Assembly: GCA_964252035.1 (NCBI GenBank)
Contig: OZ176201.1
Direction: 5' to 3' (one strand)
Source of the DNA: Podarcis erhardii
Taxonomy: Eukaryota
Length of the DNA stretch: 64,000 nt
Part shown: positions 35,469 through 61,468 of the stretch, piece by piece
Layout of the letters: every line of letters begins with the position of its first letter
Numbering within the stretch: the first letter of the stretch is position 1
Translations under genes and position numbers: made by a program
Notes under the pieces: model-generated
The model's database searches: none
Told to the model about the DNA's origin: nothing
The model's input: only the letters and a program-made list of their open reading frames with translations

Positions 35469-38400
35469 TCTCCAAAAGCAAAAAGTTAGTACTATCTAAA
35501 AGGTCCAATCCCTGCTCAACCATACTGATTGTTCAGAATTGTGGACAACAGCAAAGGCTATCCCCAAGTATACAACCTGCTTACATATATGTTGACAGGA
35601 TTTTGTAAAGTTGAATATGATGTAGTGCCACATGTAGGAGTATGCCACTATTGCTGAAATGTGATTGGAGCATGATAGAACAGAAGTGTAGGCAGAGAAC
35701 GGGGGGCATTATATGGAGGAGCAACTGCTAGCAGCAGAAGGCAGATAAAAAGTTAAGGACTGTGGCGATCACACAGGGTCCCCGGACGTTTAACGGTCTA
35801 TTGATCCCTGTGCCACCACTGCGCTCTCTTCCCCGCTGCCACCAACCCGTTACCCTCAGGTAAAACACTGAGTCCAGACAGTTGTTAAAAGTGAACCAAA
35901 TAAACAAGTTTATTTTATAAACATTAACAAGTTTATGGTTTCTCAGATAATATTCCTTTCAGTATCTTAACTTTAGTTATCTTTACCGATCTATACCTTC
36001 CTAATACCTTCTGACTGGTTATCTCAACTGTTTGGCTGACTCCTCTTAACAAATTCTCTCACTCTCTCACATCAGACTAGCCTAACCCACAGACTTATCC
36101 TCTCTGTCTCTTCTAACTCCAGACTATCTTCTCAACCACCCTAACTCTAACTAACTCACTTCCCTTGGGTTCCCATTGGTTAGTCATTTTACAATTAGTT
36201 AACCCTTTCCTTATGAACCCAGTATGATGTCACACACCTAGGAGGGCAAATGCCACAAGGACGCAGTAGGTGGGCACAGCATTTGCTAAAGAAATGATTT
36301 TTAAAAGTCCAAAGCAATACATAGAATTATCACGACTATACAAGCATTTCATTTGTTTCTTCTTTTCATATGTGTCAATTGCTGCAATGCCTGTATTTCA
36401 AAAACAATTAATAGATAGCCTAATAGTCTGAAAACCTAAAGGTCCACAGTTGTGAGTTTGCATTAACCACAGTTTGAAAACAGTGACCCAGTGTTGTTAC
36501 CTAGGCATCATTTCAAAGATAGAGTATTAGTTAGTTTAAAATGCCATGACAAAGTGATCAAGATTCACAGGGTAATGGGGGAGGGGTGCTATTGGATTGC
36601 TGTTTTTGTTTTTATTAGGTATTTTGTGGTTTTATATCTTGATTTTATTCTGTGAACCGCCCTGAGACCCCCAGGTATAGGGTGGTATATAAATTCTAAT
36701 AATGATGATGATAATGATGATGATGATAAATTATAGAATCATTCAGTCAACCAGTGCTAGGATAAAGTTCTCTTTAAGGTGGATGAGCTGTTGAGGATCA
36801 GATTAAATTTGAGGTTTGCTTGCTTGCTGACTGGAAACTGTGGGAAGCAAAAGATTGAAGCCACCTGTCACCATACCATAGTCCCAGTCCAGCTTCCTCA
36901 TTCCCTTCAGTGTCAGCTCTTTACCTTAAAAAACACACACACCAAAAAAAGCAACCTAGGGCACTACATGACAATTATGACATTTAAAATACCTGTGATA
37001 TTTTTTAAGGCTTTGCTCCTGAAAGAATCTGGGTAGCTGCCTGCTTGAGTTTGGGATTAACAAACACCAGGAGGATACCGTGAGCAGAGGGGCACATTAG
37101 CTGCACCACTGAACACATTATTGAACCAAATCTCTGTTCTGATTTTTCATAGTATTGAAATATAAGCAATAGGTGTGCCATGTAAAAAGTGACATAAATG
37201 ATCAGGAAGGAGAGCACTGTCCCAGCTGCCTTGATATGAGCTGCTGTTTGGCGGCTCCTGAAACTGGTTCCTTTACCTGTCATATTGCAGATATGTCTGC
37301 AGAGCGAGGCTACAACCATGGTGGAGCAAAGTAAAGTCACAAGAAGGGGACAGCTTGAACCAGTAATTAAAAAGAAGAGTTGTAAAGAACTGCCAGTTTC
37401 TATCCATGAGTATCCTTGAGTCATGTTTGTTATGTTGGCTGTTGTGGTGTTCTGATGTTGCACTGAAATATTATGAAATGCATAGGCAGAAAAGAGCAAG
37501 GAGGCAGCTAGAGATACTGCAAGAAGCGAGGGCACCAGGTGTGATATCCTCAGCTTGCACCAAAGGAAGAGGGAGTGGGTGCTGTTCACTATCTTGATGC
37601 AATAGAAGACGCAGAACCAGGCAAGGAGCCAGTATCGGAAGAATATGACAGAGGCTAGAAAGACATGAATCATTCTCATCGTTATGTGGTTGAACTCCAA
37701 CTTTAAGTAGTAAGTGATTATTGCTGGAATCATCAAAACTGTGACACAGATACTGGACGTTCCCATGGACAGAAGAAGTTGTTCCTTGGCATCGAGGGTC
37801 CTGCATTTAGCCCATTCAGCAACCATCACTGCAGTTATAAAGCTATTGGAGATGAACCCACAGAGGGCCATGTCGATTACAACCACCAGAAAGGCAATGA
37901 TTTGGGAAGAAGGCATATTTCCGGATTCTTGCAGATTGCTGTCTAGGTAGTCGTTTGCCAGCCAAAGTTGTTGAGTTCAAATGGAGAGTGCAAGTGTGGT
38001 AGCAGATCAGCGACATGCTTTTTAATGCATTGGGAACTATGCAAATTAACTGTGTGTCAAACCACCAATTTCCATAATGCTTTTATCTGGGGTAGTGGTG
38101 TTGATACTAACTATATAGAAGGGCTTCCTGTCACACAACTTTGTGTGTATCAGGAATGCTGCTTCAATTTGGTGTTTATGTGAATAAGAAAGTTAGCCAT
38201 AGGCAACCCCTTTGTGGCCCAGATTTTACTGCTCACTTAAAGAATAACAGGAGCTGGAAATACTGCTGTTGAAACAAGGAATAATCCGCCTCTGTAAACT
38301 ATATTTAGAAGATGTTAGCTGGCTTGCTTGCCCTCAGGTCCCCCTCATTTTGGTTTCCAGGAACTTCACAGCCAATTCTTATATTTGCTCCCAGATCATA

Positions 38401-41400
38401 AGCAAATTCTCAGGCCCCAAACCAAAAGCTTGTACAGCCCTTGTCAGTGCACTTTACCTTCCTAGTTCCTAGCTGCTCATCTCCTCATATGCTCCCCCAA
38501 AATATTGCTTCTTCTTCATGAAAAGATGCACAATGGACGAGGCAAGCTAGAATCCAGCATGGGATGGTCATAGTAGCAGGGATGGCTCAGAGGCCTGTGG
38601 TAAAACACTCTTTTACTTTTTTAAGCTTAACCAGAAGCATTTCTACTTATTTGGAGTAGTGTATAGTTGAACTACGGAAGCATAAATTTTGGTGACCAGT
38701 TCTCAGCTGACTTACTAAATATGCTGAATGCCTATTGATGCTTAAATCAACCTCAACCCTGCTCTGTCCCGTAGGACACGCAAAATGTGAAACAAGTTTT
38801 TTTGTCAGGTGCTTTCATTTCTTCTTTTTAGTTTTAGTTTTCTTTTTAGTTTTCTTTTTAGTTTTCCCCAAAGGGCCTCAATACTTGTCATCCTGAGTAA
38901 AGAAATTTACAGTGCTCATGGATGCTGTCTATGCCAAGATCTTCTACTTATACTGAGTCAACAGACAGACACAGTCCAACTCAGTTTATTTATTGGCAGT
39001 TTTTAACACCCACCATTGAAACTTAATCCTATGAATGAATGAATGAATGAATGAACCAGGATAAAAAAACAACAACATATAAATAAAATAGCAGTTAGGA
39101 TTTTTTTTTAAACTGATAAATGTTGGAGCAAATAAGGACAAAGAAACAAGCATAGGATAAAACATCTGAATAAAATACAAGATTAAACATGGATAATGGA
39201 TGGATAAAAACTGATAATTAAAGGGGTAAAGGGGACCCCTGACCATTAGGTCCAGTCGTGGCCGACTCTGGGGTTGCGGCGCTCATCTCACTTTATTGGC
39301 CAAGGGAGCTGGCATACAGCTTCCGGGTCATGTGGCCAGCATGACTAAGCTGCTTCTGGCGAACCGGAGCAGCACACGGAAACGCCGTTTACCTTCCCGC
39401 CGGAGCGGTACCTATTTAACTACTTGCACTTTGACATGCTTTCGAACTGCTAGGTTGGCAGGAGCAGGGACCGAACAACGGGTGTTCACCCCGTCACAGG
39501 GATTCAAACCGTCGACCTTCTGATCAGCAAGTCCTAGGCTCTGTGGTTTAAATAAGGACAAAGAAACACGCATAGGCTAAAACATCTGAATAAAATACAA
39601 GATTAAACACGGATAATGGATGGATAAAAACTGATAATTTAATCCTATTACGTTATATGGGCTTATTCTTAGGTAGGCGTACATAGACATCTAGGTAATT
39701 GATGTGTTTATCTTTCAGATTACGATAGGCTTTTTTTTTATTTTGTGCAGGAAGGAGAAACCTATAGCCTCCAGATGTTTCTGAGCTACAGATCCCATCA
39801 ACTAGCTTTGTTCAGGGGCGATGGGAGGTGTAATTCAGCAATATCTGGAGGTTCACCACACCTGCTTAAAAAGCACTTAGGTTTGTTTACAACTATTTAC
39901 CGAAAGTGAAATGTAAATATGGGTCCCTGATAAAGCACAGTGTTAACTATATCCATTCTTTATTTGCATTCCTGTAATTGCCGCTGAGGATTAAGTAGAC
40001 TTAAGGTGACAGCAGATCATCTATTAACTATGAAAATAATTCCAGTTACAGATAGGTAGCCGTGTTGGTCTGCCATAGTCAAAACAAAACAAATTCCTTC
40101 CAGTAGCACCTTAAAGACCAACTAAGTCAGTTCTTGGTATGAGCTTTCGTGTGCATGCACACTTCTTCAGGTATCTGAAGAAGTGTGCATGCACACGAAA
40201 GCTCATACCAAGAACTGACTTAGTTGGTCTTTAAGGTGCTACTGGAAGGAATTTGTTTTGTTATGAAAATAATGTTAGGGAAATGTAATGGATATAATAT
40301 CCCTATTTACGCTGGATTCATCTATTTCAAAAAAGAGAGCCTTCAATACAATCGAAACCTGGGCTATACAGTGGGTCATACAAAACTGCAGATTTGACAG
40401 CAGATATAACCAGCTATTGCAAGAAAATAGGAAATAAGGCAACAGCAACATATCATCTCCACGTAAAGACCCACCCAGTACCTTTAAAAAGAGGCATAAG
40501 GCAAGAAGTTAGCTTATCACCTAAACTACACTCACCTAAGCTATTTACATTCACCTTGGAAGGTGTATTAAAAGCTGGAGTGGTAAAAAAAAAAAAAGGA
40601 ATCTGTGTTAACAGAAGATATCTAAATTTTCTATGATATGCAGGTGTTGTAATAATGAAAAGTCGACAAGAGCTACAAGAAATGCTGGAATAACTGAACA
40701 AAGAATCAAATGAAAAATAAAAATATTTCTTTAGACTCAAAAGCTAAAGTGTTCAATACAGTGGTACCTCGGGTTAAGAACTTAATTCATTCTGGAGGTC
40801 CATTCTTAACCTGAAACTGTTCTTAACCTGAGGTACCACTTTAGCTAATGGGGCCTCCCGCTGCGGCCACACGATTTCTGTTCTCATCCTGAAGCAAAGT
40901 TCTTAACCTGAGGTACTATTTCTGGGTTAGCGGAGTCTGTAACCTGAAGTGTCTGTAACCTGAAGCGTCTATAACTCGAGGTACCACTGTATGTGCATAT
41001 TAGCTGTGATGTGTTATGAAGAAGTGGACACACAAAGAAACATGAATATTTAAAGAATAATGCAACATGCCATGGGACTCACAATAATAGGAATATCATT
41101 AAAAGATTGAAAAACTAATAATTGGGTACAAGAAAGACTGAAAGTTGTGGTTGTAATGGAAAAGGCTGTGAAGCTAAAGTGGGCAGGTCATGTGTCCAGG
41201 GACGATTCAGGCCAATGGAATAAAGCAGTGTTAGTATGGTGACTCTACAGTTTTAAAAGACCCCCTATGAATTTGCTGCCAAGGAGTGTGGTGGAGTCTC
41301 CTTCTTTGGAGGTCTTTAAGCAGAGGCTTGACAACCATATGTCAGGAGTGCTCTGATGGTGTTTCCTGCTTGGCAGGGGGTTGGACTCGATGGCCCTTGT

Positions 41401-44400
41401 GGTCTATTCCAACTCTATGATTCTATTCTATGATTCTATGTTCTCTAAGAAACCACAACTATTTATTTTAGGAATAATGACATCTGATATTAAAAACAAA
41501 ATAAGACTGCAGTTCATGTATGCAGTCACCACCGCCAGGAATCTAATAGCCAGAAATTGGAAAAGGGAAACACCACCACCAACCAATAGAATGGCAAGCT
41601 AAACTGGTAGAATATCTAATGTTAGCGAAAAAAATGGAACCAGTGAGAGGAGCCTCAGAAAAGGAGGTAGACAAGGAATGTAAAATGGTGAGAGAATATC
41701 TCCAAAGATACTGCAGTAGTAGAGGCTTTCTGACATTAGAAGAATGAGTAACAACATATGGTATTAATACAAAAAACAATAATGACAAAATTAAATAATG
41801 GATATAAGTAGGAAGACGATGTTTGGATCTAATGGTTACAGCAGGAAGAGTATTATGGACTTAATTAGAAGTATTCACATTTATTTTTATTTCTGTTTGT
41901 TCCACTGTATATAGGCATGTTAAATTATATGTAGGTCGCTACGATTGATTGAGCTGGAACATAGATTTGTGCAGTTTGTAAACTTAAATGCTACATTTTT
42001 CCTTTATGGGAAATCTTTTGCTATTTGTATTTTCTTTCTGGTTATTATTTTCTTTGTTTATAAACTCAATAAAGATTTTTTTTTAAAAAAAAAAAAAGAC
42101 CACCTATGTGATGGTTGGACCATCCAAAATTAACAGCAGAGCTTATGTGGTTGCAGGAAGCAAACAACAGAAAGTGATGGAGAGAACTTGAAGAGGGGTA
42201 TATCCAAAGATCAGTGGAGGTGAGGAACAGGTTTAAGGATCAAAATTCTACAAGGCAGGCTTAAGCAGTACAGTGGTGCCCCGCAAGACAAATGCCTCGC
42301 AAGACGAAAAACTCGCTAGACGAAAGAGTTTTCCGTTTTTTGAGTCGTTCCGCAAGATGAATTTCCCTATGGGCTTGCTTCGCAAGACAAAACGTCTTGC
42401 GAGTTCTTGTGAGTTTTTTTCCTTTTTTTTTTTAAAGCCGCTAATAGCCGCTAAGCCGCTAATAGCCACTAAGCCTCTAATAGCCGTGCTTTGCAAGACG
42501 AAAAAAACGCAAGACGAAGAGACTCACGGAACGGATTAATTTCGTCTTGCGAGGCGCCACTGTATGTGGACTGAGAACACCCAGAAGTGAGGACTTCCGG
42601 GTTAGCGCCATCGGCAATGGCGGTGTTCCTCTGACTGAGAGGAATCCGCTCCGTGGAATTTGGGTTGTGCCGCCGCGGCGAAGGCGGAGACCCTTTAAAA
42701 ATCCTAGGCGGAGGAAGCCTGGGAATGTGGGATTCGGCTGACACCAGGAGCCGCAGGGAAACCCCTTTTTTGGGGTTCCGAAGTGATGTGGGGTGAGCGG
42801 CGCGGTGTTTTGAATTGACCGCTATTTTTTACTGAGTGAAGACGCGTAGCCGTTGCCGGAGAGTGCTGACTTTTTCTTGTGGACAATTGGATTTCAAACA
42901 ACAACCTGTGAGTAGAACGGAAATTGGATTTTTAAAGTATTTTTAAATTGGCACCGATCGGGGAAGGTCTAAACAGGAAGTCCACCTCCCCTTTCTGTAA
43001 ATAAACTGAAGCAAAGAACTTGTTAACTAAGGTCATGGAGAGTCTTACCTAAAGGATTAAAACTCCACTGATTGAAACTACTATCAATACTCTTTTGGGA
43101 AGCAGGAAAGCTTGCAGGAGAAGGTTAAAATTTGGGAATTGAAGCACCACTTCCCTAAACCCGGGAGCAGTCTGCGAGAGCCCGTGGATGGTGAAGAAAT
43201 AAATTTGACAGCTAGCTGTCAAGATACAAAAGAAGGACTTTGTTGCTATTGTCAGTTTCTGTGTTTAAAAAGAAGGAAGGCAATTGGATCTGCTACAATT
43301 TTACGTTTGGGACTTTTGGAACTGTGCTAGAAGGAGTGTAAATGGAAACTGTGTCCCTCTAGAGGGAGTTTTGGGATAGTGTTGCAAGGTTCTAAAGATA
43401 AAGTCTCTGAGAAACTAGCTTTGACCTTGGACATTTCAAGGATGGCGGATGAGAAGGAAGTCGCGTCTGAACTGAATAGGACATTTTATCTGCTGGGAAA
43501 GCTGCAAGAACAGATAAACGTCATGGCTACTAATGTTGAAATTTTGGGAACAAAAGTGGGCATCAGCAAAGAAGTAGACAAGAACCCGGCACAGGAATCT
43601 CTTTTAATTGAACAAATTGAAGAATCAGAGAAGGAGAAAGTTGCTGCTGTTAAAGTGATGCAAGGGGGAGTCGTAACCCTACAGAGGCAAATGGTGGATT
43701 ACAACTTTAGGCCTTATACATTTGCAACTAGGAGAAGCCAGTTTTTGGAGATGAGAGCCTGGCTTGGTTTGGAAAATGAAAGATGGAGAGATCACCCTAT
43801 GTGGGGATTTTGGGATTTGAATCTGAGTCAGGTGGTGATTGGAGCCTCTGGGGCCTTTGGATTTGGTAGGAGTGTGAAACAAAATTTGGAATATTCTATG
43901 GGCCCTACCCTTAACTATGGAAGTCTGGCAGACTTGCTAAGAAGGAATATGACTGCCGTTGGGTTGGAGCTCCCCGAAATTTGTTTTTTAACACCAAAGA
44001 CTATCAAAAAGATCGGCAGAGGGGACATGAAAGAGAGTTAAGAGCCTCGGACTTAAGATCTCCGGGTTGATGGACTTTTGGAGAACTGTTGGCAGGGGCC
44101 GAGACCGGGGAGGGGAGATGGTGAAAGAAAAATTGGGAATTTAAAGTGTATATATTGTGATATTAAAAAAAAAAATCTTTTAATGAGAGATGGGGAAATC
44201 GTGGAATGGAATTTTTGTGACCCTAGGGGAAACGTCTTAAGAGAATAATTTCAGATATATAAGTTCTAAGGAGAAATAAGATTAGATAAAGTAAAAGTGG
44301 ATGGCTAATTGGCGAATGAGAGAATGGAAAATTACAGTATATTAAGATAAGTTATAAGGATAAAAATAAAGTTGAAGGATTTGCTGAAATATCTATTTGA

Positions 44401-45787
44401 ATTAGAATACAAAGAGGGGAGGTGTGAGGAGGTCAAGGAGATTAGTTAAGAAAGGGAGTTATATTAAGGTTTAACTTGTTCTTTTGTCTTTTTTGATTGT
44501 ATCTTTTATTCTTTTTAGCTGTTTTTGCTTTTTTATTTTTTTGCTTTTTTATTTTTTTTTCTTTCTTGGATATGTTTTGTTTTTGTATATTGTGTTCTTT
44601 TTTGTAACCTTTGAAAACTTTAATAAATATTATTTGGGGGGGGGGGGAGAGAACACCCAGAAGTGCAAGCTTGATTTCGAAGGGGCAGAGGAACCACCAG
44701 AGACCAAATTGCAAACATGTGCTGGATTATGGAGAAAGCTAGAGAGTTTCAGAAAAACATCTACTTTTGCTTCATTGACTATGCAAAAGCATTTGATTGT
44801 GTTGACCGCAGCAAACTATGGCAAGTTCTTAAAGAAATGAGAGTGCCAGATCACCTCATCTGTCTCCTGAGAAATGTCTATGTGGGACAAGAAGCTACAG
44901 TTAGAACTGGATATGGAACAACTGATTGGTTCAAAATTGGGAAAGGAGTACGACAAGGCTGTATATTGTCTCCCTGCTTATTTAAGTTATATGCAGAATT
45001 CATCATGCGAAAGCCTGGGCTGGATGAATCCGAAGACGGAATTAAGATTGCTGGAAGGAATATCAACAATCTCAGATATGCTGATGACACAACATTGATG
45101 GCAGAAAGTGAGGAGGAATTAAAGAACCTTTTAATGAGGGTGAAAGAGGAGAGTGCAAAATATGGTCTGAAGCTCAACATCAAAAAAACTAAGATCATCG
45201 CCACCGGGCCCATCACCTCCTGGCAAATAGAAGGGGAAGAAATGGAGGCAGTGAGAGATTTTACTTTCTTGGGTTTCATGATCACTGCAGATGGTGACAG
45301 CAGTCACGAGATTAAAAGACACCTGCTTCTTGGGAGAAAAGCAATGACATGGAAGTTAGAGCTGGACCATAAAGAAGGCTGCTCACTGAAGAATTGATGC
45401 TTTTGAATTATGGTGCTGGAGGAGACTCTTGAGAGGCCCATGGACTGCAAGAAGATCAAACCTCTCCATTCTTAAGGAAATCAGCCCTGAGTGCTCACTG
45501 GAAGGGCAGATCGTGAAACTGAGGCTCCAATACTTTGGCCACCTCATGAGAAGAGAAAACTCCCTGGAAAAGATCCTGATGTTGGGGAAGATTGAGGGCA
45601 CAAAGAGAAGGGAACGATGGAGGACAAGATGGTTGGACAATGTTCTCAAATCTACCAACATGACTGCGGGAGGCAGTGGAAGACAGGAGTGCCTGGCGTG
45701 CTCTGGTCCATGGGGTCATGAAGAGTCGGACATGACTAAACGACTAAACAACAACATATGCAAAGATGGATGTGAAATGCTATAGAA

Positions 45788-45829
<42 letters not shown>

Positions 45830-48800
45830 GGCAGTATCTTTATTTAGATGCCTGAAAAGTCTAATTCTTTCATTACCGCTGTGCTTCAGTTGTCCCTTGG
45901 GATTTGGATATTAACTTGCATATAAGGCAGGAGAAAATGCAGACTAATGTTGAAGAAAGAATGTGTGATTTGAGCACACAGAAAATTCAATTTTACACAA
46001 TGTTGAGGGAGAGACATTTGGTGTACAATGAAGGAGAAACAATACGCAAAGAACTGATCATACAGAAACATCAGAGCAGGGGGGAAAACCGTATGCATGT
46101 TTACTCAGAAGCAAGCCCGACTCTGGTAATTTTCTTCTGGGTAAGCAGGCATAGGACTGGGCATTGTTCACGTATCTTGATACAACAGAAGATGCAGAGC
46201 TAGGCAGAGCCAAAATGGGGAGAATATGACAAGCTGCAAATAGAAAATGCTGTGAATTCTCCAAGTGGTTCCTAAACACTTTATACAATAATTAATGAAA
46301 ATTGCAGTCAGTAAAACTGTCTTGCAGATATTGGGCATAGTTTGGGACAGAAGATGTTAACTAGTAGTGAGACTCCCATGTTTAGCCCATTCAGTGATTA
46401 TAAGTATAAAGTCATTGCAAATGAGCCCGTAAAGGACCAAGTCAGCTGCAGTTCTCCAAAAGCCAATGTTGCAAACATTGCCCAAGGAAATACATGGGTT
46501 GAACCCTCTTCTTTTCAGCCACTGGTTCTGGTTTTTTTTTTTAAAAAAATAATATTTTATTGGGTTTTCACAAGAAAAAAGTTAACAACAAAAGATATAC
46601 ACCAGAAAAATGCAAAAACCAAAAACTCAACACAGAAAAAGAAAAAAGAAGAAAAAGAAAAAAGAAAAAAAGAAAAATCCCTCTTTTCAATTTCTCACCA
46701 TTCTTTACCTACTTTCCTGACTTCCTCACACCTCCCTCCTTGTATTCCATTTAAAAATTTATTCAGCAAATTCATATATATATTATTACTTCATATTTTC
46801 AATTATGATCCAACCATTCTTAGAAATTCTTATCTTACCTTATTTCTCAAACCACTTCGTTTTTTACATTAATTTCATTAATTTTATCTTGCCCTCAAAT
46901 CGTTGAAATTTCAAAGTTTAACCCATATTTTAACTTCTAACCTTTCTGCTAAGGCCAATTTCTTTCTTTCCAACATCTTTTAATATTTCATTAGTAATAC
47001 ACTAATTCCATAAATGTAGTTTTATTACAAAAAGCGTTTCTCATTCTAAGTTTATCCAAAAGTCCCTTTTCCTGGTTCCGGGTAATGGCAGTCCTTATGC
47101 CTTTATCCCTCATCAGTCAGGTGTTCTAATATCTGAGGCTCTCAAGTCACTTCCAAGCCCCTTCTGCGGGTTTTCTTGTTCCTGTTTGTAGTTGCATAGA
47201 TCCTTATTCCCTGTTGGGTTCTTTCGCCTTTTCTTTTCTTCTCTTTCTCCTTGGGGGGCCAATCTCCGGGGAGTTCCATACAGTAATAATCTTCATTTTC
47301 TTTTATCCAGTTGTCCCATTCCCCGGTGTTGCACTCCCCAGTATTTAATTTGTAATCCAAAAAGTAGTTATTCCTAAAATGATCTTCCACTTGTTTCACA
47401 ATCCCGCCAGAGATAAAAAGTTTCTTGACTCCAAAATTTTCCCAGTGTCCTCCAAGTTCAGTCTCCCAGTGTTGCAACTTTTGATCATGTGGGACTTTAC
47501 ATCTCTGTATCTTTTGAGGTGCATTCACAACCACTTCCATCTTTCTCTGCCCTTGCAGTTGCTCTGTTAGGCCATTTTCCTGGGTAGATTGTTGTACAGT
47601 TTCTATAACTGCATTCCCCATTGGCACCTCTTTGCCAGCTGCAGCTGATATGTAGTCCATCTTTTGATTCATCAGAGACACTTTCTCGTCCAGCTGTAGC
47701 AGCACATCATATATTTTGCCCAGGGCAGATAAAACTTCCTCTAATCATTTCTGTCAAGGTCAGGGAGCTGGTCCCACGATCTAATTTTCCTAGTTACTAT
47801 GTTCTCATTATAAATTACTACAAACACACTGGCTGACTTCCTCTAGGGGGTGTTGTTACTTTCTGGCATCCATTTTTTAAAATGTATCCAACAAGAAGAA
47901 AATTACTTTCGATTTTCCGACATTTTGTTTCCTTTCAATATAAAACCAAACAGGCAGAAAGCAGCATTGGAATTAATTTTTTCCTTTCCAGTTCTATCTG
48001 TCAATCTTTCTATTTCAGTTCTCAAGTTGTAGGCTTCACCGACGATTTCTTTCCTGTCATTCCGTCCCCAGGTTAGGGACAGTGGAGACTCATTTTCTTA
48101 ACTCTCTCTCTGCAGGCTTAAAAAGTCCAATTCCCCCCCCCTTTCCTCCTGCTGTCTAGGGGGACTTGATGGTTAAAAGTGCAGGAAATTTCAGGCTGTC
48201 AATTTTCCGGGCACTTAGCTTGTAAAATCTTTGCTTTGATCTTTATACAAAGAATGGGAGGCGGACTTCCTGTTTGCACCTTCCCGTTTCGGGTCAAATT
48301 CAAAGCTATATTTTGATTTGAAAGTTTCAATTGTCCTACTCACGGGTTGTTGTTTAAAATCCGAATTGTCACAGGAAAAAGGACAGCGCTCTCCGACATC
48401 AGCTGTGCAGCTTCGCTCCGCAGAAGTAGCGATCGACTGTCAGCACTGCGCCAATCACACCCATCTCACTCCGGAGCTCCTTGCGGAGTTCCTTTGCAAA
48501 ACGGGGGCGCAAAAGGTGCCCGCCGAGTCCCACGGTTGCAGGCTTCACCCGCCTGCGGTTTTCGAAGGGGTCCCCGCTTCGCTGCAGCGGTAAGACCCGA
48601 TTTCTGCGGAGCTTCTCCCTCCAATTCAGAGGGAATCCGCCATTGTCGGTGGCGTCGCCTCTGGAAGTCCCTTTTCAGCCACTGGTTCTGGCTGTCCCTT
48701 TCATGAATCCCCCCCCCAAAAAAAGCTAAGCACTATTAGTCATATTGGTTAAGTGTCATGCCACAGAGCTGAAGCTCAGCTGTGAGGACATTACCATCCC

Positions 48801-51800
48801 AGAAATCTCATTCTCACAAGGTGCTGAAAATAGGGATGAGCTTGAAGCTCCTATGAAATGCAAGGAGGCACTTGGTTATGCTCCTAGGCTGAGAAACATC
48901 CAGGCCCCAGGCAATAATCAGTGGTAGTAGTATTATAAGCATTGTTTGCTTAGACACGACACTAGGTTTTTAGAAGATCAGCAACAACAAACTACTGCCT
49001 CTGGTTGAGAAGTGCTGAAACAAGTACTGGCTTATACCACAGAGCAGGCATTTCCAACTCCCAAGAGACTGTGATCTACTCCCAGTACAAAAAAACTGGC
49101 AGTGATCATTGGCATTGAGGGAGGGGGAGCTTGCGTGGGGTCGGTGGGTGGGTGAATTCCACAGAGTTGTTGAACTTTTTTGGGGGGGGGGGAGGACTGC
49201 ACAGAGTTTTTTGGCTTTCCCCCATAACTTTTTGTACACAGTCAGGATCCCGCAATCTACTAGGATCAGCCGGGGATCTATCAGTAGATCACTATCTACT
49301 GGTTGGACATCCCTGCCATAGAGGTTTTTCCTGACTTACCACAGGGACACCCTCATTCTCAGAACAAGTTCCAGCTGAACTGAGGTACTTGGTAACAATA
49401 AACTTAGAGTTCAAAGGGACCCAGAGGGTTGTTTAATCCAACCCTTCAATACAGGATTGATTGCTGCTTTAATTGATATGTTTATCTGTCAAATTAAGAT
49501 AGGTTTTTCTTTCATCAGTATCTTTAAAGGCATACATTTGTTTGCAGCTGTTTACAGAAAGGAAAATGCAAAGATGTGTGCCAGAGATAGCAGAGTGGTA
49601 AATATATCCCTTCTATATTTGCATCCCTGTGATTGCTGGTGAGGATTAAACAGGCTTGAGACAGTGCCTTTGTTTAGATTTATGAAACTTCTAATTCTTT
49701 CATTTCCTCTCTGCTTCAGTTGCCCATTGGGATGTAGATAACAACAGAACAGAAGGAAATGCAGACAATTCGTTTGACCAATATGGTTCTACATGTCTAT
49801 ACTTTTGAATAGCTGCTCTTTTTTGTATAAGTGAATATGGAAGGTCAATATCCAATCAAATGGCTCTGAACTAAAGCTCATACATCAGTCATAAGGATAA
49901 TCCCACTGCCCTGCAGATGAATAGATAGGATTGCTAATTTCTTTCTAGTCATTCATATTACTTACTCATTCCGACTAGGCATAAACATTGCCAGCAAGGT
50001 ACTCAAAAGGGCTGTTGAGATGCCTATAGCAACAAGTCGTTCATTTGAAGTTACCCAGCAGCTCCTAGTTTTTCTGCTGAAATAGACATCTCAGTAGCCC
50101 TTCTGTGTTTTGTGCAGTGCAATTTTGGGGAAGATAGCTGTGGAGTTGGAAGGTTCTCGTGGTGACTTTGCTGCCACTTATTTGGTTGATTCCCAGAGAT
50201 GCCCAAAGCCTATGCAGAAAGCTGCCCTGTCATCAACATGGCCACTTTACTGGGGAACTCCGCTCGCCCCTAACTGGTAAGGAACTTACCTGGTTCAATA
50301 GTTCTGCCTTATTAACTGTAGAGTTGGAATGTTTAGTCAGAATCTTCTTTCTTGTTATATGAATCCATTGGTTCAAGTCCTGCCCTCTGGAGCGGGAGTG
50401 GGGGGGGGAGAGAGCTTGCTTCATCTTTCATATGACAGCTGTTGAGATATTTGAAGACGGCTAGCATATCACCTCTCAGTCTCCTCTTTTCTAGGCTAAA
50501 CATACCCAGCTCCCTCAACTGTTCCCAATAAGGCTTAGTTTCCAGACCCCTAATCATCTTGGTTGCCCTCCTCTGCACACGTTCCAGCTTGTCAACATCC
50601 TTCTTAAATTGTGCCCAGAACTGGAGACAATACTCCAGGTGTGATCTGACCAAATCATAATAGAGCAGTACTCTTGACTTCCCTTGATCTGGACACCATA
50701 CTTGTGTTGATGCAGCCTAGAAGAGCATTAGCTTTTTTTGCTGCTGCATCACACTCTTGACTCATGTTACACTTGTGGTCTACTAAGACCCCTGGATCCT
50801 TTTCACATGTACTACTGGCAAGCCAGGTGTTCCTCATCTTATATTTGTGCAGCTGGTATTCCTGCCTAATTGCAGAACCTTATATTTGTCCCTACTGAAA
50901 TTCATTGTGTTAGTTTGAGCCCAGTTCTTCAATGTGTTATGGTCATACTGAATCCCAATTTTGCCTTTTGTGGCATTAGCTATCCCTCCCAGCTTGGTGT
51001 CACCTGTAAATTTGATGAGCATCCCCTCAATTCCTTCATCCAGATCTTTTATAAAGACATTGAACAACAGCGGACCTAGGACAGAACCCTGTGGCACCCC
51101 ACTGCTCACTTCTTTTTGGGATGATGAGGAACCATTAGTGAGCATTCTGGGTTCAGTAAGCCTGAGACCTGTGGGTATAGGGTGGTATATAAATCCATTA
51201 AATGAAATAAAAATCAACCCAACAGGGACTTCCGGGTTAGCGCCATCGCTTAATGGCGGATTCCCTCCGAGCTCCGGAGGGAATTGGCTCAGCAGGGGTT
51301 GGGTCATGGCGATGCGGGGACCCTAAAAAACCACAGGCGCGGAAGCCTGTGGACTTGGTGACTCGGCGGGACCATTTGCGCCCCCCCAACCTGCGAAGGA
51401 GCCTTTTTAAAGGCTACGGAACGGGGGACGGGGAGCGGCGTGGTGCTAAGAGTCCTCTGCTTCCCCTGCTGAGTGAAGCCGCATGCCATGGACGGAGAGC
51501 GCTGACTTTTTCCTGTGAACATTCAGATTAAAAGCAACAACCCGTGAGTAATACGCAAATTGGACTTAAAAGGGAAATTTTCTTTCTGAATCTGGCACGA
51601 TCGGGGAAGATGCAAAAAGGAAGTCCGTCTCCCCACCTTGTAAACAACTTAAAGCAAGGACTAAATAACTAAGGTCGAGAGAATATCTTCTTCTTTATTG
51701 AACAAAAGTTATTAATTTCACGATTGGACAGTACAAGTAATTTTGCTGGAGGATAAGAGTTGATTTTGAGAGCTGAAGTGTAACCCCCCGGGACCCGGGA

Positions 51801-54800: not shown

Positions 54801-57800
54801 TTGCATAAGGGTGAAAGGAGGAGGCAAAAAATTAACAGATTTGTTCAGCATTGGAAAATGTTTCTTGATTAGTAGCCAAACCCCCCAGACACACCTTCTG
54901 GTTTTTCCTTGTGAATGTAAGGCTATGTTTTCAGAAGCATCTGCGTAGCTGCCTGCTTGAGCTTGGGATTAGCCAACAGCAGGATGGCACCCTGTGCAGG
55001 GGAGTACATTAGGATCACTGTTAGACACACTGAATAAACAAGGGTGATTCTTTCAATATTTTCAAGTACAATTATGGAATGTGCCACGTAAAAAAAAATG
55101 TAAAGGATCAGGAGGGAGAGCACTGTCCCAGCTGCCCTGACATGAGCTTTTGTTTGGAGGCTTTGAAGACTGGCTCCTTTACCTGTCATCTTGCAGACAT
55201 GTGTGTAGAGTGAGGCTACAATCACAATGGAGCACAATAAAACCACAAGAAGGGGACAGCCAGAAGCAGTCATTAAAAAAAAGCCTTGCAGAGAACGAGA
55301 AAGTTGGGTTGCTTTCTTTCCTTGAGTCACATTTGAAGTGTTGGTTGCTATGTTGCTCTGGAGCTGAAAAGAAATATGTGGGATTGTAATCAAGGAAACA
55401 AAAACCGAAAAGACTTGGGATCCCACAAGAAGCCAGGGCAGCAGCTGCGATATCCTCAGCTTGCACCAAAGGAAGAGGGTGTGGGTGCTGTTCACTATCT
55501 TGATGCAATAGAAGACGCAGAGCCAGGCAGTGAAACAAAATCGGGTGTATGAGACGAAGGTTGCAAAGAAGTAGAATATTTGAAACACTAAGCCGTTGCT
55601 TGAGTTGGTTATTAAGAAATTAGTAATGACTGCAATCTCACAGGCAGTGGCAAAGATATTGGACGTACCCAGAGAGAGAAGTAGTTGTTCACAAGTTGCA
55701 AGACTCTTGCATTGAGCCCATTCAGTGACCATCACTGCAACTATAAAACCGTTGGAGATGAGCCCACCTAGAACCCAGTCACTTGCAGCCACCAGAAATG
55801 CAATGATTTTGGAAGAAAGCATATTTCCAGATTCTTGCAGACTGCTGTACAGGTGGACTGACCAAAGTTCTTGAGTTCATGCAGCGCACAAGTGTGATGG
55901 TAGCAGATCAGCAGCATACTTTTTAATCCATTGGGAACTATGCAAATGAACTGAGCATCAAACTATGTAAATCAATGCGCTACCAAGTTCCACAAGGCTC
56001 TTATTTGGGAGAGTGGTGTTGATACAGACTGTATAGAAGGGCTTCCTGTCACACAACCTTTTGTGAATCAGGGATGTTGCTCCATTTTGGGAGTTATATG
56101 AATAAGAAAGCTTGCCACTGGCATCCACTGCAGTGGCCCAGATGTTTCTCTGCAGGGAAAAAGTGTTAGGAGATGGGGAAATGGCCCTTGAAGCAAGGAA
56201 GGAACATCAATAAATGGAATTGGAAGATACTCGTCGTCTTGCTTATACTCAGACCCCCTTAGTTTTGGTTCTCATGACTTTTTAGCCTATTACCGGTACA
56301 GTTTACTATTTTTTGGTGGCTGCTTATTTCTCTGACCCCAATCCAGCTGTTGACATCAATCTGTCGTTTTTCTTCTTTTTGAACAGATACACAATTCAAT
56401 GGCGCAGTATCAAACTTCAGCAAGTGACAGCAATGGAGTTAGCTCAGAGATCATTTTTCCATTGCACATGCTGCAGTTGCTGCTCTGCTTAAATCAGCTC
56501 CAGCTCTGCACTGACACACAGTATACTCATAATGTAGAACCAGTTTTTAATACTGTCAAATGCTTCTGTTTCTTCTATTTAGTGCAGCCAAAGGACTTCA
56601 TTGCCTGTGCCATTCAAAGTAATGTTTTCGATTGTACTCAAGGGTGTTGTTGCCATGCTAAACCTCTGAACCTTTTAAATATATATCTGCATTAAGGGAC
56701 ATAAACAGCCCAAGCTATACATCCTTGAAATTCAATCATACTATATTCAATGGGCTTACTCTATGTACAGTGTGCATATGATTACAACCTTAAATTATAG
56801 GTTTATTTGTTAAATAATTATAGGTTTTTGTTTCCTTAGTGTATTAAAAGCACACAGATTTGTTCGTTACTGTTTTCCAGGATGGAAAAAGATTTAGTGT
56901 CTTTTACTAAGTCTAGTGGTAACTATTTCTCTTTTCTTGCATCACTATACAGTGGTACCTTGGGTTACAGATACTTCAGGTTACAGACGCTTCAGGTTAC
57001 AGACGCTTCAGGTTACAGACTCTGCTAACCCAGAAATAGTACCTCGGGTTAAGAACTTTGCTTCAGGATGAGAACAGAAATTGTGCGGTGGCGGCATGGA
57101 GGCAGCAGGAGGCCCCATTAGCTAAAGTGGTACCTCAGGTGAAGAACAGTTTCAGGTTAAGAACGGACCTCCAGAACGAATTAAGTTCTTAACCCAAGGT
57201 ACCACTGTAATTGCAGCTGAGGATCAAATAGGCATAGGACAAAATCTTTTATTAGAGTCATGAAACATCTAATTCTTGCATTGCTTTTTTGCTTCATTTG
57301 CCCCTTGGGATGTGGATAACAACCTACCTAAAGGGTGGGCAGGGGAGCAAAAAATGCAAACTAGCATGTAATAAATGTGTTGTGCTTAGAACACACGGGA
57401 AATGCAATAGCACCATGTTGTCGTGCGACCTTGTTGTACATAAATCAAACTATTCAAAGTAGACAAGAGCACAGTATGATCAGAAATGTCTAACTCCAAT
57501 AAATAACAACCAACCACATGTTCCTACGAGTCAACAGACAGCACATAAAAGTGATTGCCTACCCATTCTTTCCACCTGCAGCATGCTGAGTCTGTTTCTT
57601 TCCACATGAAGGCTCCATTTAGCTATTCTGATGAATAGCCATTGATAGACCTGTCCTTCATGGTGCATCTAATCCTCTCCTAAGATCTAGGGGGGACAGC
57701 AGGTGGCTTTGAGGATGGAGCAGGTCATGGCAGACTTCAGAGGGAGATGAGGCTGTGATGGAGACAGGCCTTAGTGTCCTTACAAAGAAGGAGATGGGAC

Positions 57801-58036: not shown

Positions 58037-58114
58037 AGGATCTCAAATATTAAAAAGCAGCCAGCCTGTGGAGATACACATCATGCCACATGAAGATTGC
58101 CAGATAGAATAGAT

Positions 58115-58369
58115 CAGGGGTCAGCAAACTTTTTCAGCAGGGGGCCAGTCTACTGTCCCTCAGACCTTGGGGGGGGGGCAAACTATATTTTGGAAAAAAG
58201 GGGGGGGGGACGAATTCCTATGCCCCACAAATAACCCAGAGATGCATTTTAAATAAAAGCATACATTCTACTCATGTAAAAACATGCTGATTCCCAGACC
58301 ATCCGCAGGCCAGATTTAGAAGGCTATTGGGCCGGATCCGGGCCCCGGGCCTTAGCTTGCCTACCCATG
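58115..58369. mobile_element. hAT MITE
   Basis: 8-bp TSD gaatagat (58107-58114 / 58370-58377); ends caggggtcagcaaact / agcttgcctacccatg. Confidence 0.8.
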
Positions 58370-59820
58370 GAATAGATCTAGCCTTTGTATCCCTGACAGG
58401 AATCCCTTTCCTCTTTCAGTGTATTCTTAAAAGATGTGCTGCTGGTGCCTTGGAAGCAGCCTTGTACAGAGTCAAACCTTTGATCCCTGCAGCCCAGTAC
58501 TGTCTATGTCGACAGAGAGCTGCTCCCCAGGATGTCAGATATCTGAAGATGCTGAGGATTCAGGCTGGGACCTTCTGCTTGGGCAGATGTTCCAACACTG
58601 TGCCACGATGCAGGTCCTTTTCAGAAAATCTGCAGCAAACAGTCAACTGTCTAATTGAACTTAACTCTTGTAGCAAAGCTGACGTCTTAAGAATTTGTAT
58701 TGCTGCTTATAACTACAAGGCTTTGTGGATAGTTCTTTCTTATTTATTTACAGGACGCCAGATCTTGGAATAATAGGTGCTAAAATTTAAAAAAAAACCC
58801 CTCAACCTTCTTGTTTTTATTGTTATATCTACTAAGCTATACATTACCAAACTGGTCCCTGAGGGAATTAAATGTCATATAAGATTATAGCTTCAAGACT
58901 GTGGTATGCAAAATATGTGGGAAACACTGATATACCAACAACAACTATGTCACAGTGAGAACCCTAAATGTAGGAATATACAACAATGGCAAAGCTTATG
59001 AGTTTTATAAGGATGAAAGAAGGAAGGGCAAAAATTAACAGGTTTTTCCCCTAAGATTGGAAAATGTTTGTTGATTATTGGCATAATAAAGCACTTACTT
59101 CAGGAGATAATAACACTTTTATTTGACAAGATAAAAGAACAACAAATAGGTTTAAAAGCTAACAGATTTAAGTATGTTATGTTATCCTGAGTGGCAAGTA
59201 CATATATAAATATTTTGGGTGTGGTGATTGTAAAATGTGAGGTTAGAGGGAAATGAAACGTGCAAAACCTCCGACAATGAGAATTACGTATTTAGCAGTT
59301 GTAGTTCACAAAACAGTTTTTGATGTCCCAGATATTGTTGCATTGGTAAATAAATACAATGTGCTAAGAATTTTCTTTTGCTGTTCCGTCAACAAATATT
59401 GCAGTGAAAACTCTTGATGTGTATTGTAACTTAGTGGATTCACATTGTAGTGTACAGTGTACCAGACAGTTAAAATGCATATTGCCATTTCTGATGTCCG
59501 ATTTTTGTCCATTTCTTATTTTGCATAGAGATTGCCCTGTGTAAAATGCAGAAGGGCATAACTGGCAGATGGCATATATCACATGAAGAGGAGAATCAAT
59601 CCCTTATGTTGCTGATGGCATTATCAGGCCCGGGAAAGGCACTACACTCTAGTTTGGCCCTAAGAATTTTCTTAAATAATCCTTGTTATTGGTATTTTTC
59701 AGCACAGGAATAAGAAACCTGTGTGCCTAACAGAACAACACGGGGGGGGGGGGACACCCCAAACCAATAACTTAAACACAATGCTCTCTGTGTGGCCAGT
59801 GTCAATGTCCTTAAGAATTG

Positions 59821-60659
59821 TTAAGTCTCTGTTTTTGGAAACATCCTGGCAGCCGCCTGCTTGAGTTTGGGATTAACCAACACCAGGATGGCAACCTGCA
59901 CAGGGCATTACATTAGTATCACTGCTACACACACTAAAATAACATATGTGGGTGGTTTTTTTACCCTGTCCAATTGTAAGCAAGGTCTCTGTCGGGCAAA
60001 AAGAGAGCATCAGGAGGGAGAGCACTTTTTCAGCTGCCTTGATGTGAGCTACTGTTTGGGGACTCTGAAAATTCAATCCTTTACCTGTCATCTTGCAGAA
60101 ATGTCTAAAGCGTGAGGCTACAACCATGATGGAGCAAAGGAAAACCACAAGAAAGGGACAGCCAGAACCAGTAAGCTGAAAAATTCATTCTTTCTTTCCT
60201 TATGTCACGTTCGTGACATTGTTTGGTATTTTGCTGTGTATTATATTATAAATATTCTGCACTGCAAACGGGGGGGGGGGGGGGACAGTGAGATGAGATC
60301 CCACAAGAAACCTGGTATCCTCTACTTGCACCAAAGGAAGGAGGAGTGGGTGCTGTTCACTATCTTGATGCAATAGAAGATGCAATAGAAGATGCAGAGC
60401 CAGGCTGTGAGCCAGAATCGAGAGAATGTGACAAAGGTTTTAAAAACAGCATTTGCGGCATTAAGTACTAACTGGTGAAAAATGGAACCATGAAACCTGT
60501 ATAGCAGACACTGGACATACCCAATGCCGTAGTTGTTCGCTGACAGCAAGGTTCCTGCATTCAGCCCATTCAGTGATGATTACTACAACTATAAAGCCAT
60601 TGGAGAGGGCCAAGTCCATTGCAGCCACCAGAAACGCAATAATCTGGGAGAGAAGGCAT
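59821..60659 (-). pseudogene. TAS2R pseudogene (frameshifted)
   Basis: Collinear with the two intact TAS2Rs from ATG CCT TCT to ...[19 protein letters not shown]. Lesions: +1 insertion after codon 3, deletion/frameshift near 60530, 12-nt tandem duplication (IFYC IFYC, ~60367-60395), and a poly-C/G run at ~60270-60284. Confidence 0.9.
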
Positions 60660-61010
60660 ATCTCTGGATTCTTTCAGACTGCTAGACTTTCACTAGCATT
60701 GAGATGGGGGGTCCAAGTGAGGTAGCAGGTCTATAGTATACTTTCTCAATGGTTGGGAACTATGGAAATGAACTATGCATCAAACTATGTAAATTCATGG
60801 GACTCTTGGCCTGCCCATTTCCATGATGCTTCTAGATAGTGTAGTGGTGTTGATGACAAACTATATTGAATGGCTTTGTATAAATTGAATTGGTGCTTCA
60901 TCTTGGTGGTTATATGGAACAAGAAATTTTGCCCAAGAGAACCCTGTTGGCGGTCTAGATTTTACTGCTCAGGTAAAGAATAGGAGGAACTGGAAATACT
61001 GCTGTTGAAT
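60660..61010 (-). promoter_or_regulatory. Decayed TAS2R proximal upstream module (octamer mutated to ATGGAAAT, 60762-60769)
   Basis: Homologous to the other two modules and lies 5' of the pseudogene. Confidence 0.55.
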
Positions 61011-61468
61011 CATGGAAGGACCACCCCTGGTGTTTACAATATGGGGTATCATAGGGCACTATTCTATCCCCATTGCTGGGAGCAGCCATTAGGACTTTGG
61101 GGGCCAGGTGTGATTTGTATGCTGATCCTCAGCTTTCTTTATCCAGAAGTTCTGAATCAGGAGAAGCGATGTGGGCCCTGGGCTGATTCCTTGATACAGA
61201 CTTGGGATGGATGAGGGGGAATAAGCTTGTTTGTATCCTGGCAAGATGGCTTTGATCTGTGGAACTGTCACGGTTACACAAGCCACATAATATCTGTTCA
61301 GTAGCTGTAAGAAATTGATCTTTTAATGTGGTAGCACCTAAACTGGAACTCCCTGCCTATTGATATCAGACATATGCCTTTGCTGTGCTCTTTCTGGTGC
61401 CTGCTTAAAACGTTCTGTATGTTCTGTGCAGACGTACAGAAGTTACAGTCCTTTACGTAATCCCTGGT

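What the first reader, a model, noticed from the sequence alone, without database searches (positions are those of the whole stretch)
38019..60769. POU octamer about 120 bp upstream of both intact TAS2Rs, mutated in the pseudogene
Seen: within a ~350-bp module conserved 5' of three TAS2Rs, gggaactATGCAAAT occurs at 38039-38046 and 55940-55947 (123 and 118 nt from the ATG). A TATA-like TTAAAAA lies about 15-20 nt closer to the gene in each. In the pseudogene both are broken (ATGGAAAT at 60762-60769; the A-run is disrupted). Established: ATGCAAAT is the POU2-class octamer, and POU2F3 (Skn-1a) specifies type II taste and tuft cells in mammals. Inference: a direct POU2F3-driven TAS2R core promoter under purifying selection in functional copies only.
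Basis: partly seen in the sequence, partly recalled or inferred. Interest (0 to 1): 0.75.

Follow-up and report, generated by a model that had tools for sequence, protein, structure and literature searches.

The report
Conserved octamer sites upstream of lizard bitter-taste genes
Lizard bitter-taste receptor genes carry an upstream control region whose slowest-changing piece is the classic 8-letter "octamer" site, and a second element 1-2 kb further up holds two more, so one family of transcription factors probably switches these genes on directly.

Summary
The window comes from a lacertid lizard and holds three TAS2R copies on the minus strand: two intact and one pseudogene. ATGCAAAT lies 123 and 118 nt from the two intact ATGs. 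CCAAT and TTAAAAA lie between the octamer and the gene. All three motifs are altered in the pseudogene.

I compared 23 TAS2R copies from 10 squamate species.
- The 300 nt upstream of the ATG stays alignable between paralogs in 75% of pairs; the 3' flank does so in 4%.
- Within that module the octamer is the slowest-evolving 8-mer: 6 inferred changes, against about 23 on average. This is fewer than any run of 8 third-codon positions.
- Sense octamers are about 30-fold enriched at -260..-50.

New here: a second conserved element 1-2 kb upstream of TAS2R copies in six of the seven squamate families sampled (none found at the one Elgaria locus). It holds two inverted octamers, and ATGCAAAT is again its best-kept 8-mer.

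The link to pseudogenes is weak. One pseudogene keeps a perfect site, and 6 of 20 intact genes carry one-mismatch variants (Fisher p = 0.27). POU2F3 as the binding factor, and the position of the transcription start, remain inferences because no RNA data were found. One frog gene and one bat gene showed no octamer. No paper in the searched library describes this.

The parts
37005..37916 (-). TAS2R copy c1, intact, 303 aa
   Evidence: ORF. Pfam TAS2R E 1.4e-49. 93% identical to the Podarcis muralis TAS2R40-like protein.
37917..38355 (-). Proximal 5' module of c1 (candidate promoter plus 5' UTR)
   Evidence: blastn homology to the c2 and c3 flanks. Alignments.
38039..38046 (-). Octamer, ATTTGCAT in the gene's direction, 123 nt from the c1 ATG
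   Evidence: Slowest-evolving 8-mer of the module.
38029..38033 (-). CCAAT motif of c1
   Evidence: Moderately conserved: 19 inferred changes for GTTCCCAA.
38019..38025 (-). TATA-like TTAAAAA of c1
   Evidence: 15 inferred changes for ATTAAAAA. Absent in skinks.
38068..38076 (-). TATGGAAAT block of c1, second most conserved 8-mer of the module; binding factor unknown
   Evidence: 8 inferred changes; majority fraction 0.93.
39820..40030 (-). Distal conserved element of c1, about 2 kb upstream; ATGCAAAT at 39962-39969
46210..46467 (-). Relic TAS2R fragment between c2 and c1
   Evidence: tblastn. Also present in P. muralis at L001:4515-4772.
49440..49760 (-). Distal conserved element upstream of the relic fragment; ATGCAAAT at 49617-49624
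54923..55822 (-). TAS2R copy c2, intact, 299 aa
   Evidence: ORF. Pfam TAS2R E 5.5e-52. Orthologs are Zootoca C and P. raffonei C.
55823..56270 (-). Proximal 5' module of c2
55940..55947 (-). Octamer (proximal site) of c2, 118 nt from the ATG
55965..55972 (-). Second, distal octamer-like site of c2, ATTTACAT in the gene's direction. This is the position that is perfect in non-lacertoid squamates.
55920..55934 (-). TATA-like TTAAAAA (55920-55926) and CCAAT (55930-55934) of c2
56769..57335 (-). Distal element of c2, split by a high-copy repeat at about 56972-57209. Its first octamer is lost through a 3-nt deletion.
   Evidence: (very high depth). Zootoca C has the same deletion.
59827..60659 (-). 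TAS2R pseudogene c3, with frameshifts and stops
   Evidence: In P. raffonei the gene body is deleted (L007:14796-15327).
60660..61017 (-). Proximal 5' module of c3, the most degenerate of the set
60762..60769 (-). Mutated proximal octamer of c3, ATTTCCAT in the gene's direction. A second octamer-like ATTTACAT lies at 60787-60794.
   Evidence: The P. raffonei relic is in the same state.
62480..62800 (-). Distal conserved element of c3; ATGCAAAT at 62659-62666

Best explanation
Squamate TAS2R genes duplicate together with a compact cis-regulatory cassette. That cassette has been kept by selection since the squamate families diverged.

The cassette has two parts.
1. A proximal module of about 300 nt directly 5' of the ATG. 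Its order, in the gene's direction, is ACCACTGT, TATGGAAAT, one or two tandem octamer sites (ATTTGCAT) about 25 nt apart, CCAAT, TTAAAAA, and then a conserved leader of about 80 nt.
2. A separate element 1-2 kb upstream. It holds two octamers in inverted orientation about 50 nt apart.

The octamer is the most constrained motif in both parts. I take it to be the binding site of a POU2-class factor that activates these genes directly. The most likely factor is POU2F3 with an OCA-T coactivator, acting in taste or chemosensory cells. TTAAAAA probably acts as a weak TATA element, which would place the start about 75-90 nt before the ATG.

Shown: the motifs, their positions and their selective retention.
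Inferred: the identity of the factor, the cell type, the transcription start, and promoter-enhancer cooperation.
For: 1. The module is retained while neutral flanks are lost. Among 15 non-orthologous intact genes, -300..0 gives a local blastn hit in 75% of 105 pairs. The figure is 15% for -600..-300 and 4% for the first 300 nt after the stop.
2. On the CDS maximum-likelihood tree, the octamer columns need 6 Fitch changes. That is the lowest of all upstream 8-mers, whose mean is about 23. It is also below the minimum (8) and mean (22.7) of any 8 consecutive third-codon positions.
3. The three T's that correspond to A5-A7 of ATGCAAAT show 0 changes. A5 is the base that OCA-T contacts (PMC12755459).
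4. All 15 intact lineages keep a site within one mismatch, and 9 of the 15 are perfect. Lacertoids keep the proximal site; anguimorphs, skinks and all iguanian genes but one (Sceloporus, where neither site is perfect) keep the distal one. At least one near-consensus site is therefore always present.
5. 15 sense octamers fall in 4830 nt of proximal windows, where 0.5 are expected.
6. The distal element is conserved in Lacertidae, Rhineura, Anolis, Sceloporus, Pogona, Varanus and Tiliqua. It always lies on the gene's strand and, wherever a TAS2R is visible downstream in the locus, upstream of it. Its best 8-mer is ATGCAAAT (0.93) and the next is TTGCATTT (0.88).
7. The distal element is not homologous to the proximal module, so the two results are independent.
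8. Established knowledge: POU2F3 reads the octamer as POU2F1 does. [quoted passage not shown]
Against: - No RNA data. No RNA run holds the locus, and the runs I laid are low-coverage genomic contigs. The transcription start and the expression of these genes are therefore unknown.
- Averaged over its length, the module is not more conserved than third-codon positions: majority fraction 0.66 against 0.75, and pairwise identity 0.59 against 0.665 at fourfold sites. Squamate rates are slow enough that some retention is expected without selection.
- The gene tree shows family-specific clades. The number of independent lineages is modest, and the switch between distal and proximal sites is a single event.
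- Any POU2, POU3 or POU5 protein can bind this site.
- A mouse scATAC study found no correlation between the Pou2f3 gene score and enrichment of its motif, and suggested a repressor role (PMC10239704).
- One frog gene and one bat TAS2R1 gene have no octamer in -600..0.
- The c2/C lineage has lost both distal octamers and is still intact.
Confidence: 0.55

Rival explanations
1. The octamers are functional sites, but the factor is not POU2F3. They could be read by ubiquitous POU2F1 (Oct-1) or by another POU or homeodomain protein. In that case cell-type specificity would come from the other conserved blocks (TATGGAAAT, ACCACTGT, CAACAACTTTGG) or from chromatin.
For: All POU2 proteins read the same octamer. 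Several other blocks are nearly as conserved: TATGGAAA needs 8 changes and AACAACTT needs 11. The mouse scATAC study found no link between POU2F3 motif enrichment and its gene score.
Against: POU2F3 is the only octamer factor known to be selective for TAS2R-expressing cell types. The invariant A5 fits a requirement for an OCA-type coactivator, although OCA-B with Oct-1 or Oct-2 has the same requirement.
Confidence: 0.22
2. The octamers are retained by descent with little or no selection on them. Slow squamate substitution rates, family-specific recent duplications and alignment bias would make a chance AT-rich 8-mer look constrained.
For: Fourfold-site identity between paralogs is still about 0.67, while module identity is 0.59. 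Lacertid orthologs differ by only 3-10% everywhere. The tree has few deep lineages.
Against: The octamer changes less than any run of 8 third-codon positions. The same 8-mer ranks first in a second, non-homologous element. The 3' flanks and the more distant 5' flanks have lost all similarity.
Confidence: 0.1
3. The proximal module is mostly transcribed leader, with the start further upstream and possibly at the distal element. Its conservation would then reflect RNA-level functions such as translation control or splicing signals, and not promoter sites.
For: The 80 nt just before the ATG are among the best-conserved parts. AG-ending acceptor-like sequence (ACAG/CAG) lies about 25 nt before the ATG, and GTGAGT-like sequence lies nearby in iguanians and Elgaria. 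The distal element has its own octamer followed by TTTTTAAG.
Against: RNAalifold finds no consensus structure and no covarying pairs. No Rfam family matches. No conserved splice donor follows the distal element. The ATG inside TATGGAAAT is not kept in c2. Octamer, CCAAT and a TATA-like element within 30 nt is a classic promoter layout.
Confidence: 0.13

Closest known systems
Immunoglobulin V-gene promoters (octamer about 20-40 nt upstream of TATA; Oct-1/Oct-2 with OCA-B), plus octamers in Ig enhancers
   Same: Both are large, tandemly duplicated receptor gene families in which each copy carries its own short promoter. Both have a conserved octamer just upstream of a TATA-like element, and the same motif is reused in a distal element. 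In both, a cell-restricted POU2 factor or OCA coactivator is the natural source of specificity, and both depend on A5 of the octamer (the remainder is textbook knowledge).
   Different: The gene family, cell type and clade differ. Binding has not been shown here. The TATA-like element is non-canonical and is dispensable in skinks. Extra conserved blocks (TATGGAAAT, ACCACTGT) have no counterpart in Ig promoters.
POU2F3 / OCA-T1/2 tuft-cell and type II taste-cell programme (mouse, human SCLC-P)
   Same: The DNA motif is the same, and the TAS2R-expressing cell types depend on POU2F3.
   Different: In mammals POU2F3 is known as a lineage selector. Its direct targets in taste cells are described as undefined (PMC13361435), and Tas2r regulation as little known (PMC10239704). 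No octamer was seen upstream of the one bat TAS2R1 gene examined.
Histone H2B promoters (octamer + CCAAT + TATA)
   Same: The same three motifs occur within a few tens of nucleotides.
   Different: In H2B the octamer lies next to the TATA box and the CCAAT boxes lie upstream. H2B is regulated by the cell cycle through Oct-1/OCA-S and is not tissue-specific. This comparison rests on my own knowledge and was not tested here.
Odorant-receptor and V1R gene promoters and enhancers (shared homeodomain/O-E motifs; conserved V1R promoters)
   Same: Both are chemosensory receptor families whose members share short conserved promoter motifs, and the same motifs recur in distal enhancers.
   Different: The motifs and factors differ (Lhx2/Ebf against POU). 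This comparison rests on my own knowledge.

Membership tests
POU2-class octamer binding site | Exact match to the consensus ATGCAAAT / ATTTGCAT | tested here: met
   Perfect matches at 38039-38046, 55940-55947, 39962-39969, 49617-49624 and 62659-62666. 14 of 20 intact squamate genes have a perfect proximal site.
POU2-class octamer binding site | Evolutionary constraint on the motif beyond that on its flanks | tested here: met
   6 Fitch changes against a mean of about 23 for upstream 8-mers and a minimum of 8 for runs of third-codon positions. It also ranks first in the distal element.
POU2-class octamer binding site | Adenine at position 5, needed for recruitment of an OCA coactivator | tested here: met
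   0 changes at that column in 15 lineages. The requirement itself is from PMC12755459.
POU2-class octamer binding site | Bound by POU2F3 in vitro or in vivo | not testable with these tools
   Needs EMSA, ChIP or CUT&RUN.
TATA-containing core promoter | TATA consensus TATAWAWR | tested here: not met
   The element is TTAAAAAG, which is A/T-rich but not canonical. It is missing in the three Tiliqua genes and replaced by TTCATAAG in the intact lacertid B genes.
TATA-containing core promoter | Transcription start 25-35 nt downstream of the element | not testable with these tools
   No RNA run holds the locus, and the runs I laid are genomic contigs.
Selection confined to functional gene copies | Motif intact in intact genes and decayed in pseudogenes | tested here: inconclusive
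   Intact genes 14 of 20 perfect; pseudogenes 1 of 3 perfect; Fisher p = 0.27. c3 has the lowest match to the conserved columns (0.67).
Structured RNA element | Conserved secondary structure with covariation | tested here: not met
   RNAalifold predicts 0 pairs. There are no Rfam hits.

The most novel reading that the evidence does not exclude
The squamate TAS2R family is wired directly to POU2F3/OCA-T through a portable two-part cassette: a proximal promoter with tandem octamers, plus an upstream enhancer with an inverted octamer pair. The cassette travels with each gene duplication. This would be a chemosensory counterpart of the immunoglobulin octamer/OCA-B system. It would also be the first case in which the taste-cell lineage selector is shown to be the direct activator of the receptor genes.
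Probability: 0.35. Interest if true: 0.75.

Novelty: new member of a known kind. Interest (0 to 1): 0.6.

Why it matters
How bitter-receptor genes are switched on is largely unknown. The papers found here say that Tas2r regulation is little known and that POU2F3's direct targets in taste cells are undefined.

A short, deeply conserved cassette with octamers as its most constrained motif gives a concrete, testable link between the lineage factor and the receptor genes. It also supplies small promoter and enhancer fragments for reporter work. Finally, it explains how new TAS2R duplicates can be expressed correctly from the moment they arise.

Tried and rejected
- RNA evidence for a transcription start. 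The look-up of sequencing runs found no RNA holder. The four runs I laid were low-coverage genomic contigs of related lizards, so they gave no starts or splice joints.
- Footprinting among lacertid orthologs. Divergence is only 3-10% everywhere, so it is uninformative.
- Mean identity of the module against synonymous sites. The module is not above fourfold or third-position identity. The case therefore rests on which parts stay alignable and on per-motif change counts, not on overall identity.
- RNA structure and Rfam. Nothing was found.
- An upstream ORF starting at the ATG inside TATGGAAAT. That ATG is not kept in c2.
- Homology between the proximal and distal elements. None was found.
- Splicing from the distal element. 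No conserved donor is present.
- Outgroups. Only one frog gene and one bat gene could be fetched before the look-up cap. Neither has the octamer. That is too few to say whether the feature is specific to squamates.
- Literature. Seven searches found no paper describing an octamer in TAS2R promoters.
- An earlier-findings search by words returned nothing for TAS2R.


Full report
**1. What is in the window**

The window is from a lacertid lizard. The c1 protein is 93% identical to a Podarcis muralis TAS2R, and non-coding DNA is 97-99% identical to Podarcis raffonei.

Three TAS2R copies lie on the minus strand.
- c1 at 37005-37916 is intact (303 aa).
- c2 at 54923-55822 is intact (299 aa). Both c1 and c2 match Pfam TAS2R over their full length.
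- c3 at about 59827-60659 is a pseudogene with frameshifts and stops in every frame.
- A short relic fragment lies at 46210-46467.

In the related lizards fetched, the cluster sits inside introns of an APEH-like gene on the opposite strand and next to an MST1-like gene. This arrangement is shared by Podarcis, Zootoca, Rhineura, Varanus, Tiliqua, Sceloporus and Pogona.

**2. The observation**

Every coordinate in the finding is correct.

Read in the gene's direction, c1 and c2 share the block ATTTGCAT-AGTTC-CCAAT-Gn-ATTAAAAAG. The octamer is 123 and 118 nt from the ATG. In c3 the octamer reads ATTTCCAT, CCAAT reads CCAAC and TTAAAAA reads TGAGAAA.

Homology between c1 and c2 runs through the CDS and about 440 nt of 5' flank, and stops at the stop codon.

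The window-wide octamer count is not remarkable on its own: 9 found against 4.55 expected. However, 5 of the 9 lie in TAS2R-associated conserved elements.

**3. Comparative test**

I fetched the loci of ten squamate TAS2R proteins plus one frog and one bat. Together with the window this gave 23 squamate copies: 20 intact and 3 pseudogenes.

A sense-oriented perfect ATTTGCAT lies between -104 and -207 in 14 of the 20 intact genes. The other six carry a one-mismatch variant at the homologous place:
- GTTTGCAT in Zootoca A and Rhineura 1
- TTTTGCAT in Anolis 2
- ATTTACAT in Tiliqua 1
- ATTTGCAC in Tiliqua 2
- ATTTGAAT in Sceloporus

There are in fact two tandem octamer positions about 25 nt apart.
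- Lacertids and Rhineura keep the proximal one perfect. Their distal one has decayed to ATTTACAT, or is deleted in c1.
- Varanus, Elgaria, Pogona, Anolis and Tiliqua keep the distal one. Their proximal one has decayed or is deleted.

The CDS tree shows family-specific clades, so this switch was one event in the lacertoid stem.

**4. Is this more than shared ancestry?**

The picture is mixed when averaged over the whole module, and clear at the level of single motifs.

Averages:
- Paralogs are only about 50% identical in protein, but fourfold-degenerate sites are still 0.665 identical and module columns 0.59.
- The module's mean column conservation (0.66) is below that of third-codon positions (0.75).
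- Overall identity therefore does not show constraint.

Three results do show constraint.
- **Retention of the module.** Only the proximal 300 nt stays alignable between paralogs: 75% of 105 pairs give a local hit. The figure is 15% for -600..-300, 4% for -900..-600, and 4% and 0% for the two 300-nt bins after the stop codon.
- **Change counts.** On the CDS tree the octamer columns need 6 changes. That is the lowest of all upstream 8-mers (mean about 23) and lower than any 8 consecutive third-codon positions (minimum 8, mean 22.7). The next blocks are TATGGAAA (8), AACAACTT (11), ATTAAAAA (15) and GTTCCCAA (19). The three T's that correspond to A5-A7 of ATGCAAAT never change.
- **Enrichment.** 15 sense octamers lie in 4830 nt of proximal windows, where 0.5 are expected.

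**5.

Three other perfect octamers of the window (39962, 49617, 62659) lie in a repeated stretch 2-3 kb upstream of c1, of the relic and of c3. The c2 copy of this stretch is split by a high-copy repeat.

This element of 200-300 nt is found on the gene's strand in all families sampled except the one Elgaria locus. Wherever a TAS2R is visible downstream in the locus it lies upstream of it, usually by 1-2 kb. In some loci the associated gene is not visible or lies further away:
- The first Rhineura copy is about 9 kb from the next gene.
- The Sceloporus copy is about 6 kb away.
- The Anolis copy is near the end of the locus.

Several genes have no copy of their own.

Its core holds ATGCAAAT and, about 50 nt further on, ATTTGCAT in the inverted orientation, followed by TTTTTAAG. 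Its best-conserved 8-mer is ATGCAAAT (majority fraction 0.93) and the second is TTGCATTT (0.88).

Its consensus shows no significant similarity to the proximal module (z = 0.1 and 1.8). The octamer therefore ranks first in two independent conserved elements.

**6. The pseudogene claim**

c3 is a separate paralog lying between the B and C genes. In P. raffonei its gene body is deleted, but the remaining promoter stump has the same three lesions. They therefore predate the species split and count as one event.

c3 has the lowest match to the module's conserved columns (0.67).

Against the claim:
- The Rhineura pseudogene keeps a perfect octamer.
- Intact Zootoca A and its pseudogenised P. raffonei ortholog share GTTTGCAT.
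- Fisher p = 0.27.

The pattern is compatible with relaxed selection but not demonstrated.

**7. Mechanism**

The layout of octamer, CCAAT and an A/T-rich element within 30 nt is that of a classic octamer promoter.

If TTAAAAA acts as a TATA element, the start would fall about 75-90 nt before the ATG, in the conserved CTGCTACC..CACTTTCC stretch. In c1 this stretch contains an initiator-like CCACACT 28 nt after the first T. This is inference only.

POU2F3 reads the octamer as POU2F1 does, and its OCA-T coactivators need A5 (PMC12755459). POU2F3 selects type II taste cells and tuft cells in mouse (PMC13361435).

I therefore favour direct activation by POU2F3/OCA-T. The sequence alone cannot separate this from Oct-1 or other POU proteins. 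One mouse study even suggested a repressive role for POU2F3.

No consensus RNA structure and no Rfam family explains the module.

**8. Limits**

- No RNA data were available.
- Only two non-squamate genes could be examined, and both lacked the octamer.
- Copies are related by descent, so the counts overstate independence.
- Alignment errors inflate change counts in non-motif columns. The comparison with third-codon positions does not suffer from this.

**9. Novelty**

Octamer promoters are textbook. I found no paper in the searchable library that describes conserved octamers, or any conserved promoter cassette, for TAS2R genes. Recent papers call this regulation poorly understood.

I file it as a new member of a known kind, of moderate to high interest.

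Noticed in passing
window 39820-40030, 49440-49760, 56769-57335, 62480-62800 (minus strand); L005:8637-8906, L008:16251-16451, L010:7965-8167 and others: A 200-300 nt element 1-2 kb upstream of TAS2R copies is conserved across squamate families. It holds two inverted octamers about 50 nt apart. It could be an enhancer or an alternative promoter.
   Followed up: yes
window 38068-38076 and homologous places in all loci: TATGGAAAT is almost invariant across squamate TAS2R promoters (8 changes). Its reverse complement, TTTCCAT, recurs in a conserved block about 75 nt before the ATG, so the two form an inverted pair around the octamer region. The factor is unknown. The motif is one base away from a reversed octamer.
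   Followed up: partly
L007:14796-15327 (Podarcis raffonei) against window 59868-60734: In P. raffonei the whole body of the c3 pseudogene, plus about 75 nt of its promoter, is deleted. The flanks are 94-98% identical to the window.
   Followed up: yes
window 1-64000; L001, L002, L003, L005, L007-L010: The TAS2R cluster is nested, antisense, inside introns of an APEH-like serine hydrolase gene and lies next to an MST1-like (PAN/Kringle/Trypsin) gene. This synteny is kept across squamate families.
   Followed up: partly
window 56972-57209 and about 58100-58300: Two very high-copy short repeats, with depth of 1e4 to 3e5 in genomic contigs of related lizards. The first splits the distal element of c2. 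Other copies lie at 40757-40983 and 33646-33865.
   Followed up: partly
window 44717-45397 (+), 50834-51307 (-): ORFs with reverse-transcriptase domains (Pfam RVT_1) lie between c1 and c2. They are retrotransposon remnants.
   Followed up: no
L009, L010, L006 just before the ATG (for example the last 60 nt of L009:9781-10000): In iguanians and Elgaria the conserved leader contains GTGAGTGAAG, which resembles a splice donor. About 20 nt later comes TTACAG/CAGG, which resembles an acceptor. The gap is too short for an intron, and the meaning is unknown.
   Followed up: no
window 29440-29447 and 29669-29676 (minus strand): Two further perfect octamers lie 230 nt apart on the TAS2R strand, outside any TAS2R-linked element. 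I did not examine them further.
   Followed up: no
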